Assembly (NCBI GenBank): GCA_002269645.1
Contig: NIVC01001010.1
Span: 186,001 to 250,000 of the forward strand
Direction: 5' to 3'
DNA from: Macrostomum lignano
Taxonomy: Eukaryota
Length of the DNA stretch: 64,000 nucleotides
Below the pieces are notes generated by a model. It was not told the DNA's origin. It was given only the letters and a program-made list of their open reading frames with translations, and ran no database searches. Positions within the stretch are counted from its first letter, which is position 1, and each line of letters starts with the position of its first letter. The position numbers were made by a program, and so were the translations under genes. Below are positions 15,066-19,802 of this stretch, piece by piece.

Positions 15066-18000
15066 ATGGGTGGAGACAAAAAAGAGAAGAAAAAGAAGAA
15101 GCATCGTGAAGCTGAATTAGCTGATTCTGTCGGAGAGATGCACACATCGGAGAACTTCATCATTCAGCCATCAGAGCGAGTTGCCAGTCTAGATGCTTCT
15201 CATTGGCCTATCCTGTTGAAGAATTTTGACAAGCTAAATGTGCGCACCAATCACTACACACCGTTGCCATTTGGCTGCTGTCCGTTAAAGCGTCCAATTA
15301 AAGACTATGTTTCGTGAGTGTTCAAACAAATTGCTTTTACAGCTTTTAGTTCATCTTGGTAAACTTTTTGCTGAATGGATCAGAGGCAGGGGTTATGGTT
15401 GTTGTGTAATAGATTAGGGGCTATGGGAATTGTATAATAGACCAGGGGCTATGGGAATTGTGTAATATACCAGAAGTTGTATAATAGACCAGGGGCTATG
15501 GGAATATATTAATAAAAATATATATAGATATTTGAAATAAATATATTATTCAAATACGTTCCCTGCTACTAGCTTAGGGTTAGAAATTGTCCTAAATTAA
15601 AAATCCGATTTCTCAAACAGATCCGGCGTCATCAATCTTGACAAGCCGAGCAATCCCAGCTCGCACGAGGTTGTCTCGTGGGTCAAGCAGATACTGAAGG
15701 TGGACAAAACTGGTCACAGCGGCACCCTTGATCCGAAGGTCACCGGCTGCCTCATCGTGTGCATCGGCCGGGCTACCCGGTTAGTGAAGAGTCAGCAGTC
15801 TGCTGGCAAAGAGTACGTGGCCATTTTCAAGCTGCACTCTCTGGTCAAGGATGAGAAACGCCTTCTAGCCGCAGTTGAGACTCTCACTGGCGCTCTGTTC
15901 CAACGGCCGCCATTGATTTCGTCTGTTAAACGCCAGCTACGAATTCGAACAGTGTATAAATCGAAGCTGTTGGAGTATAATGCCAACAGAGGAATTGGTG
16001 AGCCTGTTTTAGCCTGTTTAACAATACGCTTGTATTAGCTATTGGCAAAGTAACAAAGGAAGGCATAAAAATTCGGATAGAACTATTAAATTTTCTTTTA
16101 TTAAAAGTAAAACGCAGCAATAGTGTAGTCACTATTGTTGGTTCATTTAAAAAGAAGAAATCTACAATTGACTGCCGAACCCCAACCAGTTTATTTGTAG
16201 TCACTCACTCAGTCAGACATTATTTAGCTTGATAATTTAAATGCAAATGAACTGGAAAAAGCATTAAAAGGACTCATAGTACTACTATCGAGACTACTTT
16301 CACGTATTAAAATGTGAATCACGTTTTCCTAGTGTATAAGTGCCTAGTTGCCACGTAAAACGTTTAGGTTTAGTTATAGTTTGAGTTTAATGAAGTAACT
16401 ATTTAGAGCAGGCATATGGTTCAATATGAATATCTAACACGCTGAACTGTAGGCATTCTGTGGCTTGACTGCGAGGCCGGCACCTACGTTCGCACGTTGT
16501 GCGTACATCTCGGCCTGCTGCTTGGCGTCGGCGGCCAGATGATTGAATTGCGTCGCGTCCGATCCGGCCTGCACAAAGAGAAGGTATTGAATGTTGATGT
16601 TTGAGGACAGCAAGATTCAGTATGTAGGATTTTGTTACACACTGGTTTTCAGCAGGAGTCTTAATAAAGTGCTTTTGGTACTTTGATAGGATTCTTAATA
16701 TAGTGCTTTTGGTACTTTGATAGGATTCTTAATAAAGTGATTTTGGTACTTTGATAGGATTCTTAATAAAGTGCTTTTGGTACTTTGATAGGATTCTTAA
16801 TAAAGTGCTTTTGGTACTTTGATAGGATTCTTAATATAGTGCTTTTGGTACTTTAATAGAATTCTTAATAAAGTGCTTTTGATACTTTGATAAACTTTTA
16901 GCAACTTCTTTACTTTCAGATTTTTAATCTTGTTAGGGTTCTTTATAACCTTATTATAATTCTTAGACTATCCTTCGGGTGATTTGTCTGCCCCATGTTT
17001 CCTAGTGGACTCTGACCTCAATTCAGTCATGGCTGTACATCCTGTGTGAGTGTATAAGTGCATGCCTCGTATTGGCGCGCTTGTATGTGCTCAGAACGCC
17101 CGCAGCCCTATTAGCATCGGTATAGCAGCACCGATTACACTGCCCCACCCCCTCCTACAGGACAACTTGGTCACCATGCACGACGTGCTAGACGCCCAGT
17201 GGATGTACGAGAATCACAAAGACGAGTCCTATCTGCGCCGGTCAATCCGGCCGCTTGAGTGCCTGCTAACCGGACACAAGCGCGTCTTTGTCAAGGACAG
17301 CGCCGTTAATGCAGTCTGCTACGGCGCCAGGATTCTGCTGCCCGGCGTGCTGCGCTACGAGGACGGCATCTCAGTTGGCGAAGAGATTGTCGTCTGCACT
17401 ACTAAGGGTGAAGCCATCTGCATTGGTAAGTTGAAGATGAAACATCACATTTTTTTCAGCGTGAAATTGATTATAAAATACTTTTGGATTCCTTAATTGA
17501 AAATTCTCTATTAACAGTGGGTAAACAAATGTGTACTCTATTTTTTTAATTCTCAGCTATCGCCCAGATGACAACGGCGGTGATGGCCTCCTGCGACCAC
17601 GGCATGGTGGCCAAATCCAAGCGAGTAATCATGGAGCGCGACACCTATCCGCGCAAATGGGGCCTCGGCAATCGGGCTGTTGAGAAGAAGAAGCTCATTG
17701 CCGCTGGCCTGCTTGGCAAATTCGGCAAGCCGAACGATAAGACGCCGAAAGAGTGGCTGCAGCACTGCCCGCCGCTTGAGCAGTCCGGCTCGGCTACTAA
17801 GTGAGTAAACAAATTCTTCCGTTTAATTCTATTGTATATTTGCTACTGTTCACTCGCTGTACACCTTGTGTGAGCGTGTGTATGAGTGCTGTGACTGAGT
17901 ACAGCATTGGCGCGCTTGTGCAGTGTGCTCAGGGGTCAGCGGAATGGGCAGACTTGCCGTCAGCGCTGGTTGTGGGACGATGCCGCCGCCAGGGTGGTTT

Positions 18001-18303
18001 CACAATATCTAAAATTCGTGTGCTACAGCTGCAGTATATATTTATACATGATGAAGCATGCAACAACAATTTCAGGTCACCTGCTAACGACAAAGGGGCT
18101 GAGACGACCGCAACGCCAAGCGCTTCAGCTTCAAAGGTAATAATTAATGGTTTTGATCGGGTCGTACGCTTCAGTTTATATCCACCAAGTAGCTTTATAA
18201 TGTGCCTTGAATTATAATATATGATTGTTTTGTCTTCTAGAAGGCCGCCAAAAAGCCTGCGCCGCCGGACTCGTCCGATTCTGATTCGTCAGATTCCGAT
18301 TGA
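15066..18303 (+). CDS. DKC1: Dyskerin / Cbf5 H/ACA pseudouridine synthase, 7 exons, 462 aa
   Basis: Exons 15066-15313, 15621-15997, 16453-16583, 17161-17425, 17557-17800, 18076-18136, 18241-18303. All introns are GT..AG, phases are compatible, total 1389 nt. Motifs: [14 protein letters not shown], catalytic [26 protein letters not shown] domain, [13 protein letters not shown]. Confidence 0.97.
15385..15505. repeat. Intron 1 minisatellite (AGGGGCTATGGGAATTGT.TAATAGACC)
   Basis: 3-4 diverged units. Confidence 0.7.
16659..16893. repeat. 34-bp minisatellite in dyskerin intron 3
   Basis: TCTTAATAAAGTGCTTTTGGTACTTTGATAGGAT, about 7 units. Confidence 0.92.
17031..17142 (+). ncRNA. Candidate intronic structured RNA A (H/ACA-like or pre-miRNA/mirtron-like)
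   Basis: Closing stem GGCTG/CAGCC; long upper stem TGAGTGTAT-AAGTGC / GCGCTT-ATGTGCTCA; small hairpin ATCGGT/ACCGAT followed by ACA+3 nt. Paralog of element B. No canonical H box after the large hairpin. Confidence 0.55.
17855..18007 (+). ncRNA. Candidate intronic structured RNA B (paralog of A)
   Basis: Closing stem CGCTG/CAGCG; upper stem TGAGCGTG-TGTAT-GAGTGC / GCGCTT-GTGCA-TGTGCTCA; identical ATTGGCGCGCTTGT; two smaller hairpins, then ACA at 18002-18004. Confidence 0.55.
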
Positions 18304-19802
18304 TCGCCTGGTAAGCGGATTCTGGTATGCCAATGTTAATTGCTACAGCTTAGAAATGATGCCCAAAAATGTCTGATCCGAATCTTGCTGTGGAATCTAA
18401 TAAATACACTGATCTGTTGCTCAATGAGTCAAGAATTATTTTCTGATTTATCGATGATAAAAGTCTGGATAAAATATTTTGTTATAAACCTTTCTTTCCA
18501 GATTTTTCCAAACTGCGACTTCCCCTTGGACGAGCTGCAGTTTCGAATGACTTGATAATGAAGTCTGGCTTAAATTGATTTCTTGTAAAAAATAAACGTG
18601 TCTGGTCGGTGTCAGTTGCGCTTCTGTAGTTCCATTTTATGTCGCATTGTTCGCATATTTTAAAATTTAATTAAAATTTTTTTTTTCAAAAACATTTATT
18701 GGTTGAAAGCGTTTAATACTTGATAGTTCAAATTTATAAACGCATTGCAGACAGTGCCGTCTATGTTTAACGGCACTGCAAAAGCAGTTAACAAAAATCG
18801 CCGCGTTTTTTGCTGACGTTAGTAACAACTTTTTGTGAAGTGCGTGTTTCCATAGTAATTTGTAGCAAAAGCCATGCTTATTCATCTGTTTGACTATTGT
18901 GCGATTGTTGAGAGAGCGCTTCGACTGCCAAACTTTTAGCAATGAAGTGGAGACAAGGAACCTGTTGCTTGCATTTTTCATCCCCGATGATATGAAAAAT
19001 ATAAAGGAATGCAGTTTTCTCGAAGGAAGGCCTGCAAATTATTCTTTTTTAAGGCCGCTTCGTGTTTTTGGGATAAATTGTTTCTTTGATGACTTCAAAA
19101 TTGGTTTTGCTTTGTTTTCATATACTATGAAAATGGATGCTTAAGGTCCTGTCAAGTGCAAACATTGTCACAGTGTCAGTCTTGATCTACAAGAGGGGTG
19201 AGTCCTCTGAACTCTAAACGGGTGAGGGTTTTTTTAAACTCCCGAATTCGCACGTGCGTCTGCAGTCATTTTTTCAATTTTAGATGACCCGCTCCGCTTT
19301 CCGCTGTTAACTGTATTGACGCCGCGCAAAGCATAGTAAGTGTCGTATTTATCACTGCTGTGTTGTAGTAGTATGTTGCTACTTCAATAATTTATCATGA
19401 TGAAAATTGACAAGCATATGGCTGAAATAAATATGTTAGACATTCTAATGCCTGATAGTATCCGAGAGTTTGAATAGCTGCAGAAGTAAGCCAGTGTTAA
19501 AAAATGTTATGTTCAAGTCTGACTAAGTTTTCTTTGCAAATTGAATCATTTTAGATCCGAGAGACCAATCATGATTGTCCAGCTTGCGAGGTAAGAACAC
19601 TGACATACTATCAATTTTCCAGATTAACTATCTTGAGTCATTTATTTCTAGCTTTTAGCCAATAAAAGTGTAAGCGTGGCTTAAGTCTTTAACTTTCGAG
19701 TGAAGGTTTATTTTATGTAGATCGACTTGTTTAGCGCGTACGAGTATATGCTAAGGTGTGATATTTTTGAGTTTTGTGTACCAATTTCAGCAAATAAGAA
19801 TA

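What the first reader, a model, noticed from the sequence alone, without database searches (positions are those of the whole stretch)
17031..18007. Two paralogous structured RNA-like elements in dyskerin introns 3 and 5
Seen: the non-adjacent introns share GCTGTACAYCYTGTGTGAG, GTATRAGTGC, an identical ATTGGCGCGCTTGT and GTGCTCAG, while flanking intron DNA is unrelated. Both fold into an ~80-nt hairpin. The closing stem covaries (GGCTG/CAGCC in A, CGCTG/CAGCG in B), the upper stem tolerates U/C and A/G swaps, and the apical loop differs most. Each is followed by small hairpin(s) and an ACA. Known: human DKC1 hosts H/ACA SNORA36A and SNORA56 in its introns, and Drosophila mfl hosts H/ACA snoRNAs. 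The K|D junction holding A looks like the SNORA36A intron position (from memory). Inference: a new, non-canonical (no clear H box) dyskerin-hosted RNA family, possibly a sensor by which dyskerin regulates its own pre-mRNA, analogous to SNORD86 in NOP56.
Basis: partly seen in the sequence, partly recalled or inferred. Interest (0 to 1): 0.8.

Follow-up and report, generated by a model that had tools for sequence, protein, structure and literature searches.

The report
Paired intronic hairpin modules in dyskerin
Two introns of the flatworm Macrostomum lignano dyskerin gene carry diverged copies of one GC-rich module that folds into a long sense-strand hairpin, but it is not a recognisable H/ACA snoRNA, the copy in this window is truncated, and whether it functions cannot be settled with the sequence available.

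Summary
The window is Macrostomum lignano; the host gene is dyskerin (7 exons, 15066-18304, + strand). The shared motifs in introns 3 and 5 are real, and they occur only there in the 64 kb.

Two other dyskerin copies from the same genome show that window element A has lost 44 nt. Full-length A and B share about 125 nt at 78% identity: a long imperfect hairpin plus a conserved tail containing a 4-bp mini-hairpin.

All 7 stem substitutions between A and B are pair-preserving transitions, one pair is compensatory (U-A to C-G), insertions are mirrored on both arms, and the apex is replaced. This suggests RNA-level constraint, but it rests on two lineages and partly on my own alignment.

H/ACA membership fails: there is no consensus pocket and no H box, one B copy reads AAA instead of ACA, and Rfam gives no hit. 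Intron 3 does sit exactly where mammalian DKC1 intron 8 hosts SNORA36.

- **Best reading (0.4):** a sense-strand intronic structured RNA of unassigned class.
- **Main rival (0.3):** a neutrally decaying local duplicate or low-copy repeat.

Genome-wide copy number, orthologous introns and expression could not be tested here.

The parts
15066..18304 (+). Host gene: M. lignano dyskerin CDS. Exons: 15066-15313, 15621-15997, 16453-16583, 17161-17425, 17557-17800, 18076-18136, 18241-18304.
   Evidence: The spliced translation gives 462 aa, 100% identical to BOX15_Mlig011386g1. All introns are GT-AG.
17032..17142 (+). Element A, truncated copy, in intron 3. It holds the hairpin 5' arm, the apex and the upper 3' arm, then (after a 44-nt deletion) an unrelated 3' segment with a 6-bp hairpin and ACA.
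   Evidence: Alignment with homeologous loci L002 and L003 shows a 44-nt gap after 17093/17094.
17039..17093 (+). Element A hairpin remnant. AUCC (17039-17042) has lost its GGAU partner. Retained helices: UGAGU:GCUCA (17047-17051 with 17089-17093), GUAUAAGUGC:GCGCUUGUAU (17052-17061 with 17077-17086), and apical GCC:GGC.
   Evidence: Folds; pair table.
17071..17084 (+). Invariant 14-mer ATTGGCGCGCTTGT, copy in element A (loop-proximal 3' arm).
17116..17139 (+). Element A 3' module: AUCGGU-AUAGCAGC-ACCGAU hairpin, then U, then ACA (17137-17139). It lies 21 nt upstream of the intron 3 acceptor. It is not homologous in sequence to the 3' module of B.
17855..18007 (+). Element B, full length, in intron 5. 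It holds the hairpin, the conserved tail, the 3' hairpin and ACA+3.
17855..17941 (+). Element B long hairpin. Helices: P1 CGCUG:CAGCG; P2 ACCU:GGG(G)U; P3 UGAGC(GUGU):(GUGU)GCUCA; P4 GUAUGAGUGC:GCGCUUGUGC; apex 17890-17911 with a competing GUGCUGUG:UACAGCAU helix.
17906..17919 (+). Invariant 14-mer ATTGGCGCGCTTGT, copy in element B.
17941..17972 (+). Conserved tail GGAAUGGGCAGACUUGCCGUCAGCGCUGGUUG with mini-hairpin GGCA-GACU-UGCC (17947-17958). The homologous segment of A is present in L002/L003 but deleted in the window.
17982..18004 (+). Element B 3' module: GCCGCC-GCCAG-GGUGGU hairpin, then UUC, then ACA (18002-18004). The ACA reads AAA in L003.

Best explanation
Elements A and B are diverged copies of one GC-rich module of about 125 nt. 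The module was duplicated within the dyskerin gene before the M. lignano dyskerin copies themselves multiplied, because all three loci carry both elements.

On the sense (pre-mRNA) strand each full-length copy forms:
- a long imperfect hairpin of 26-31 bp in four helices, with a variable apex;
- a conserved single-stranded tail containing a 4-bp mini-hairpin;
- a copy-specific short hairpin followed by ACA.

I read it as an intron-borne structured RNA whose hairpin is under selection. It would be transcribed as part of the dyskerin pre-mRNA. It would then either be trimmed out of the excised intron as a stable small RNA of roughly 90-150 nt, or act in cis while still in the pre-mRNA. It is not a pseudouridylation guide. 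The copy of A in this window has lost 44 nt (the lower 3' strand plus the tail) and is probably a crippled copy.

Shown: paralogy, the strand-asymmetric hairpin, the pattern of substitutions, the deletion, and the absence of H/ACA hallmarks. Inferred: that the RNA structure is selected, and that a stable RNA or a cis effect exists.
For: - **Paralogy.** The two copies are homologous at 78% identity over 109 aligned columns, while the flanking intron is unalignable.
- **Substitution pattern.** Of 19 shared base pairs, 6 differ between full-length A and B. Five are one-sided compatible changes, one is compensatory (U-A to C-G), and none is disruptive.
- **Transitions only in stems.** All 7 stem substitutions are transitions. 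P(all pairs kept | 7 random transitions) is about 0.05. Non-stem aligned differences are 6 transitions and 11 transversions.
- **Mirrored insertions.** B has +4 nt on the 5' arm and +3 nt on the 3' arm at mirrored positions, lengthening the helix. The most divergent segment sits exactly at the apex.
- **Stability and strand.** The full-length A hairpin folds at -25.1 kcal/mol against -15.1 +/- 2.7 for shuffles (z -3.8). The + strand hairpins are 12-14 kcal/mol more stable than the - strand, with many G.U pairs.
- **Near-optimal fold.** The consensus fold is within 2 kcal/mol of the MFE in A, and the same register is the MFE of the 75-nt B hairpin.
- **Composition.** The elements are 55-64% GC islands in 24-35% GC introns.
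- **Context.** Dyskerin hosts intronic snoRNAs in a mammal and a fly (PMC12683209). Element A's intron is the positional homologue of the SNORA36 intron. A genuine U27-like C/D snoRNA lies 1.1 kb downstream in the same transcription unit.
Against: - There are only two independent lineages (A-type and B-type), so statistical power is low.
- The upper-stem register depends on my manual alignment. RNAalifold on the MAFFT alignment chooses another register and gives no net covariation (+1.06).
- The sequence is GU-rich, so G.U-rich hairpins come easily. The B hairpin (z -0.9) and the whole elements (z about 0 to -1.2) are not better than shuffles.
- At 78% identity, identical runs of 14-16 nt are expected by chance.
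- The copies are not visibly more conserved than flanking intron between homeologous loci: 0.7-2.1% against 1.1-3.1%.
- One copy tolerates a 44-nt deletion. L003's B has 4 substitutions, one of them in the conserved tail and one changing ACA to AAA.
- There is no known family, no boxes and no expression data.
Confidence: 0.4

Rival explanations
1. Neutral relic. A GC-rich segment of about 130 nt, possibly a fragment of a low-copy repeat or a retro-inserted RNA, was duplicated locally between introns 3 and 5 and has been decaying since. The hairpin would be a by-product of GT-rich, microsatellite-like arms.
For: - Divergence of 22% plus 21 gap columns fits an old neutral duplicate.
- Homeolog comparison shows no extra constraint.
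- A 44-nt deletion in one copy and ACA to AAA in another are tolerated.
- Fold z-scores are mostly unremarkable.
- RNAalifold shows no net covariation on the automatic alignment.
- Tandem repeats lie next to the elements in introns 1 and 3.
- From general knowledge, the M. lignano genome is highly repetitive.
Against: - All 7 stem substitutions are pair-preserving transitions, whereas non-stem changes are mostly transversions.
- One pair is compensatory, the arm insertions are mirrored and the apex is replaced.
- The full-length A hairpin has z -3.8.
- No further copy exists in the 64-kb window or the roughly 25 kb of extra M. lignano flanks.
- Two same-orientation copies in one 3-kb gene are unlikely for independent insertions.
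Confidence: 0.3
2. Non-canonical H/ACA-like RNP. A non-guide 5' hairpin is joined to a minimal 3' module (a 6-bp hairpin followed within 1-3 nt by ACA). The module would recruit dyskerin for 3'-end protection and yield an orphan or decoy H/ACA-like RNA from dyskerin's own introns.
For: - Both elements end in a 6-bp hairpin plus ACA, even though those segments are not homologous.
- The elements are sense-strand and intronic, in a gene that hosts H/ACA snoRNAs in other animals.
- Element A's intron is at the same position as the SNORA36 intron.
Against: - No ANANNA box lies between the domains, by inspection.
- The A/B consensus has no pseudouridylation pocket.
- The ACA reads AAA in L003's B.
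- No Rfam H/ACA model scores, even at E<=10 on a 221-nt target.
- ACA plus a short hairpin is a weak, post-hoc pattern.
- The shared intron position has roughly a 1-in-3 chance expectation, because at least introns 1-4 sit at mammalian positions.
- B's intron is not the SNORA56 intron.
Confidence: 0.1
3. Intronic pre-miRNA paralogues. The hairpins would be Drosha/Dicer substrates, and the invariant AUUGGCGCGCUUGU would be the 5' part of a 3p miRNA.
For: - The arms are conserved and the loop is variable.
- The B stem reaches about 31 bp.
- The 14-nt invariant block sits at the start of the 3' arm.
- The only Rfam near-hits are GU-rich miRNA hairpins: mir-2060 at E=1.1 and mir-297 at E=1.4.
Against: - Those Rfam hits are far below threshold.
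- The A stem is only about 26 bp with a 7-nt loop, too short for a canonical 22-nt duplex plus basal stem.
- The 4-bp insertion low in B's stem would shift the cleavage register, so the invariant block would not keep its position in the mature RNA.
- The conserved 32-nt tail is unexplained.
- The folding index is below typical pre-miRNA values (energies).
Confidence: 0.08
4. DNA-level regulatory module. The conserved blocks would be transcription-factor sites, for example the E2F-like TTGGCGCGC and the palindromes TGTACA and CAGCGCTG, forming an intronic enhancer of a proliferation-linked gene.
For: - The invariant block contains TTGGCGCGC, which resembles the E2F consensus TTTSGCGC (from general knowledge).
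- Exact copies of it occur only in elements A and B within the window.
Against: - With one mismatch the motif is not enriched in the window: 13 matches against 8.6 +/- 3.2 expected.
- A DNA element does not predict strand-asymmetric G.U pairing, pair-preserving substitutions or mirrored arm insertions.
Confidence: 0.05

Closest known systems
SNORA36 (Rfam RF00340), the H/ACA snoRNA in intron 8 of vertebrate DKC1
   Same: It lies on the sense strand in the dyskerin intron that splits the same codon boundary: aardvark K310|D311 and M. lignano K252|D253, both phase 0. The size range is similar (132 nt).
   Different: - SNORA36 has two pocket-bearing hairpins and folds at z -4.1.
- The flatworm module has no pocket and no H box, and shares no sequence or CM similarity.
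- The shared intron position alone is weak evidence, because at least four of the M. lignano introns are at mammalian positions.
snoR639/snoH1 (RF00291), the H/ACA snoRNA in Drosophila Nop60B/mfl
   Same: It is an intron-hosted, sense-strand small RNA in the dyskerin orthologue (154 bits in D. rhopaloa).
   Different: It sits in a different intron, within KDSS|VNAVC, a position that has no intron in M. lignano. It is a canonical H/ACA and shows no similarity to the flatworm module.
SNORD86 in NOP56 (a snoRNA acting as a sensor that steers host pre-mRNA splicing)
   Same: Only the concept is shared: a structured RNA in an intron of a snoRNP-protein gene that could couple protein level to host splicing. 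The literature exists (search), but the mechanism is cited from general knowledge.
   Different: - SNORD86 is a canonical C/D snoRNA overlapping an alternative splice site.
- Here there are no boxes and no overlap with a splice site.
- Annotated models do skip exon 6 downstream of B, but nothing links that to the element.
AluACA RNAs and other non-guide H/ACA-like RNAs (from general knowledge)
   Same: They are intron-derived and have an atypical 5' hairpin without a pocket plus a short 3' hairpin followed by ACA.
   Different: AluACA RNAs retain a recognisable H box and derive from a high-copy repeat. Here no H box is present and the copy number is unknown.

Membership tests
Box H/ACA snoRNA/scaRNA | Hairpin-hinge-hairpin-tail architecture with two hairpins of about 60-70 nt | tested here: not met
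   There is one long hairpin (about 75-87 nt), then a 12-nt mini-hairpin and a copy-specific 17-20-nt hairpin. The 3' hairpins are too short to carry a pocket.
Box H/ACA snoRNA/scaRNA | Pseudouridylation pocket: a large internal loop, with both strands of about 4-10 nt, located 14-16 nt upstream of the H or ACA box | tested here: not met
   The 9x8-nt loop in window A exists only because of the 44-nt deletion. In full-length A and in B, the A/B consensus closes it with AYCY:RGGU, including a compensatory pair.
Box H/ACA snoRNA/scaRNA | H box (ANANNA) in a single-stranded hinge right after the 5' hairpin | tested here: not met
   No ANANNA occurs in either hinge, by inspection of the sequences. 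The nearest strings, AGAAUU and AGACUU, lie in the loop of the mini-hairpin.
Box H/ACA snoRNA/scaRNA | ACA box 3 nt from the mature 3' end, directly after the 3' hairpin | tested here: inconclusive
   An ACA follows a 6-bp hairpin by 1 nt in A and by 3 nt in B. It reads AAA in the L003 copy of B. The mature ends are unknown.
Box H/ACA snoRNA/scaRNA | Match to a curated H/ACA covariance model | tested here: not met
   No H/ACA family scored at E<=10 on window 16900-18100 or on full-length A in L002. As controls, SNORA36 scored 114.7 bits and snoH1 154.3 bits in the aardvark and fly genes.
Box H/ACA snoRNA/scaRNA | Association with dyskerin/NHP2/NOP10/GAR1 and bipartite complementarity to an rRNA or snRNA uridine | not testable with these tools
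   No M. lignano rRNA sequence, RIP data or expression data were available.
Box C/D snoRNA | C box (RUGAUGA) and D box (CUGA) brought together by a terminal stem | tested here: not met
   Full-length A has AUGAC...CUGA, but 7 nt out of register with its terminal stem. B reads CUGG at the D position. For contrast, the U27-like snoRNA at 19397-19458 has both boxes.
Animal pre-miRNA | Stem of about 33-35 bp with a 22-nt duplex, and a cleavage register conserved between paralogues | tested here: inconclusive
   B has about 31 bp and A about 26 bp with a 7-nt loop. A 4-bp insertion shifts the register between the copies. The Rfam miRNA hits are not significant (E 1.1 and 1.4). No small-RNA reads were available.
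Dispersed repeat (SINE/MITE) | Many copies elsewhere in the genome; terminal inverted repeats, target-site duplications or a poly(A) tail | tested here: inconclusive
   - No other copy exists in the 64-kb window, in the L002/L003 flanks, or in five other animals' dyskerin loci.
- Two metagenome scans found nothing.
- No TIR, TSD or A-tail was seen.
- The M. lignano genome itself could not be searched.

The most novel reading that the evidence does not exclude
The module is a new class of dyskerin-hosted RNA. A conserved non-guide hairpin would be fused to a minimal hairpin-ACA handle that dyskerin binds. Occupancy of the handle in introns 3 and 5 would then tune splicing of dyskerin's own pre-mRNA. 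Possible routes are branch-site access next to element A, or exon-6 skipping downstream of element B. This would be an H/ACA-side counterpart of the SNORD86/NOP56 feedback.
Probability: 0.06. Interest if true: 0.8.

Novelty: new variant of a known kind. Interest (0 to 1): 0.4.

Why it matters
If the hairpin module proves to be a selected, expressed RNA, it would be a previously undescribed RNA family hosted by the gene for the H/ACA pseudouridine synthase. It would lie in the very intron that hosts SNORA36 in vertebrates. That would raise the question of whether the snoRNA-host relationship of dyskerin is ancient and has been repurposed in flatworms. It would also offer a tractable candidate for snoRNP autoregulation in a regenerating model organism. 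If it is a decaying duplicate, the lesson is methodological: a single truncated copy can mimic an H/ACA pocket and a covarying closing stem.

Tried and rejected
- **Rfam.** No family reached the gathering threshold in the whole window, in the two other M. lignano dyskerin loci or in the mollusc and annelid dyskerin loci. E-value scans of the region, of full-length A and of four of those loci gave only chance-level hits.
- **Hand fitting of box snoRNAs.** Canonical H/ACA fails on the H box and the pocket. C/D fails on box register. Both were rejected.
- **Other RNA classes.** No tRNA or tmRNA was found. Hammerhead, Y RNA, U6 and 5S resemblances seen by eye are not backed by any Rfam score and were dropped.
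- **More copies.** An nhmmer profile search, a repeat search and two metagenome pattern scans found nothing.
- **Orthologous introns from relatives.** The full-length protein search shows no Macrostomum relative above 75% identity. The exon-5 peptide search returned only insect-like or other fragments. No related flatworm locus could be fetched.
- **The same intron in other Spiralia.** The Owenia K|D intron (about 210 nt) shows no significant snoRNA signal. Capitella has no intron there. The Liolophura intron was read but not analysed further.
- **Homeolog conservation test.** Divergence is too low (1-3%) to be informative.
- **Long-range pairing of the conserved blocks with the rest of the pre-mRNA.** Nothing exceeded the shuffled controls. 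A 9-bp match to exon 4 is at chance level.
- **Literature.** Searches for M. lignano snoRNAs and for the invariant 14-mer found nothing relevant.
Full report
**Identity of the locus.** Splicing seven GT-AG exons on the + strand gives a 462-aa protein. The exons are 15066-15313, 15621-15997, 16453-16583, 17161-17425, 17557-17800, 18076-18136 and 18241-18304. The protein is 100% identical to Macrostomum lignano BOX15_Mlig011386g1 and carries the DKCLD, TruB_N, TruB_C_2 and PUA domains. The window matches contig NIVC01001010.1. Element A lies at the 3' end of intron 3 (16584-17160). Element B lies in the middle of intron 5 (17801-18075).

**The observation.**
- The shared strings are real. GCTGTACAYCYTGTGTGAG occurs twice in 64 kb, against 0 of 100 shuffles with two matches.
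- ATTGGCGCGCTTGT also occurs twice.
- A profile built from the two elements finds only these copies, with E-values of 1e-15 to 1e-29.
- Both regions are 55-64% GC islands in 24-35% GC introns.
- Both fold into hairpins on the + strand.

**The window copy of A is truncated.** M. lignano has at least two more dyskerin loci: L002 (NIVC01002336) and L003 (NIVC01000815). In both, A carries 44 extra nt directly after GTGCTCAG, namely GGATCCAGCGCGCGGAATGGGCAGAATTGCCGTCAGCACTGATT. These are homologous to B 17932-17972. Because B has this segment, the window copy has suffered a deletion.

This changes the anatomy in three ways.
- (i) A/B homology spans about 125 nt, from CUGUACA to CUGRUUG. Identity is 78% over 109 aligned columns, with 21 gap columns.
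- (ii) The true lower helices are (C)GCUG:CAGC(G) and AYCY:RGGU. In window A, their 3' strands are gone. A fortuitous downstream CAGCC pairs with GGCUG instead.
- (iii) The large internal loop that looked like a pseudouridylation pocket is therefore an artefact.

**Consensus structure.** On the sense strand the shared fold has these parts.
- P1: (C)GCUG:CAGC(G).
- P2: AYCY:RGGU.
- A UGUG bulge.
- P3: UGAGY:GCUCA, extended by 4 G.U pairs in B.
- P4: GUAURAGUGC:GCGCUUGURY.
- A non-homologous apex.
- A tail, GGAAUGGGCAGAMUUGCCGUCAGCRCUGRUUG, with a GGCA/UGCC mini-hairpin.

**Evidence for the structure.**
- Of 19 shared pairs, 6 differ between full-length A and B. One is a double compensatory change (U-A to C-G), five are one-sided compatible changes, and none breaks a pair.
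- All 7 stem substitutions are transitions. The chance that 7 random transitions keep all pairs is about 0.05. Non-stem aligned differences are 6 transitions and 11 transversions.
- B's extra 4 nt (5' arm) and 3 nt (3' arm) sit at mirrored positions.
- The full-length A hairpin is much more stable than shuffles (z -3.8). Both hairpins are 12-14 kcal/mol weaker on the minus strand. This fits a sense-strand RNA.

**Cautions on the structure.**
- The upper-stem register depends on my manual alignment. RNAalifold on the MAFFT alignment picks B's alternative register and gives no net covariation. It does recover P1 and the compensatory pair in P2.
- B's hairpin (z -0.9) and the whole elements are no better than shuffles.
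- The arms are GU-rich, which makes hairpins cheap.
- At 78% identity, runs of 14-16 identical bases are expected by chance.

**No extra constraint between the homeologous loci.** Homeologous introns differ by only 1-3%. The elements differ by 0.7-2.1%, so there is no power to see constraint. Individual copies tolerate damage. The window's A has the 44-nt deletion. L003's B has four substitutions. One falls in the conserved tail and one changes ACA to AAA.

**Family membership.**
- Rfam gives nothing at gathering thresholds for the whole window or the other dyskerin loci.
- At E<=10 it gives nothing but chance-level hits on the region and on full-length A.
- The same search recovers SNORA36 (114.7 bits) in aardvark DKC1 and snoH1 (154.3 bits) in Drosophila rhopaloa Nop60B.
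- Against the H/ACA definition: there is no ANANNA hinge box, no pocket in the consensus, and the 3' hairpins are too short.
- The one H/ACA feature present is an ACA 1-3 nt after a 6-bp hairpin in both elements. Those 3' segments are not homologous. The pattern is weak and not fixed.
- C/D boxes are absent or out of register.
- A pre-miRNA reading fits B's roughly 31-bp stem. It fits poorly with A's 26-bp stem and 7-nt loop. The register-shifting insertion and the conserved tail also argue against it.

**Host-gene context.**
Aardvark SNORA36 lies in the intron between ...VMSEK and DHMVT... (K310|D311, phase 0). That is exactly M. lignano intron 3 (LHKEK|DNLVT, phase 0). Human SNORA36A is in intron 8 and SNORA56 in intron 12 (PMC12683209).
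- M. lignano introns 1-4 all sit at mammalian intron positions. The coincidence therefore has roughly a 1-in-3 chance expectation.
- A degenerate SNORA56 relic (16.4 bits) marks aardvark intron 12. That position (after ...EYVDY) has no intron in M. lignano. B's intron is therefore not the SNORA56 intron.
- The fly snoH1 sits in yet another intron.
- The homologous K|D intron of the annelid Owenia shows no significant snoRNA signal. Capitella lacks that intron.

**What could not be tested.**
- No orthologous Macrostomum introns could be obtained.
- The M. lignano genome cannot be searched for dispersed copies.
- No expression data are available.
- Two metagenome scans were empty.

**Verdict.** The finding is a real pair of paralogous modules that form hairpins on the sense strand.

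| Reading | Probability |
|---|---|
| Intron-borne structured RNA of unassigned class, hairpin under selection (best) | 0.4 |
| Neutral old duplicate or low-copy repeat | 0.3 |
| Non-canonical H/ACA-like RNP | 0.1 |
| pre-miRNA | 0.08 |
| DNA-level enhancer | 0.05 |

The host-gene context keeps them alive as a low-probability, high-interest possibility.

Noticed in passing
window 19397-19458 (+); L002 11422-11490: A U27/SNORD27-like box C/D snoRNA lies about 1.1 kb downstream of the dyskerin stop codon (Rfam SNORD27, 43.1 bits, E=2e-4, below the gathering score of 52). It has a C box AUGAUGA, a D' CUGA and a D CUGA. The guide GACAAGCAUAUG upstream of D' is complementary to the universal 18S 5' region CAUAUGCUUGUC, which places the methylation at the equivalent of human 18S A27. 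The 18S sequence is from general knowledge.
   Followed up: partly
window 18076-18136 (exon 6), 18501-18555 and about 19566-19591: The UniRef models P0122-P0124 of the same gene skip the 61-nt exon 6, which shifts the frame. They run on into downstream exons (…ICPNCGFPLDELQFRMT; …RETNLMIVQL). This implies alternative 3' ends of the dyskerin transcription unit, whose introns would host the U27-like snoRNA. Element B lies in the intron just upstream of the skipped exon.
   Followed up: partly
window 17093/17094 versus L002 9084-9127 and L003 8461-8504: A 44-nt deletion is specific to the window copy of element A. In addition, L002 and L003 read GACTG where the window and B read G at the second position. 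It should be checked against raw reads as a possible assembly error.
   Followed up: partly
window 16620-16926 (intron 3) and 15387-15514 (intron 1): Intron 3 holds a 34-bp tandem repeat of about 7-9 units. Intron 1 holds a 28-bp tandem repeat. Copy numbers differ strongly between the three dyskerin loci, and the intron 1 array is much expanded in L002. In L002 and L003 the 34-bp array abuts element A directly.
   Followed up: no
window introns after aa 82, 208, 252 and 340, compared with L007: M. lignano dyskerin introns 1-4 are at positions shared with the aardvark gene. The flatworm has kept a subset of ancestral introns rather than gaining new ones.
   Followed up: partly
window 18008-18075 versus L002 and L003: Mosaic sharing of variants among the three loci (CTACA...GCAG, CCTAA...GAAT, CTACA...GAAT) suggests recombination or gene conversion between the dyskerin copies. 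L002 has TTTAAG instead of TTTCAG at the intron 5 acceptor.
   Followed up: no
L007 9280-9390: Aardvark DKC1 intron 12 holds only a very weak SNORA56 match (16.4 bits against a gathering score of 80). The snoRNA may be degenerate in this species or assembly.
   Followed up: no
window 18738-18780: A perfect 9-bp hairpin (CAGUGCCGU...ACGGCACUG) lies in the region downstream of dyskerin, followed about 30 nt later by a T6 run (18807-18812). It was not analysed.
   Followed up: no
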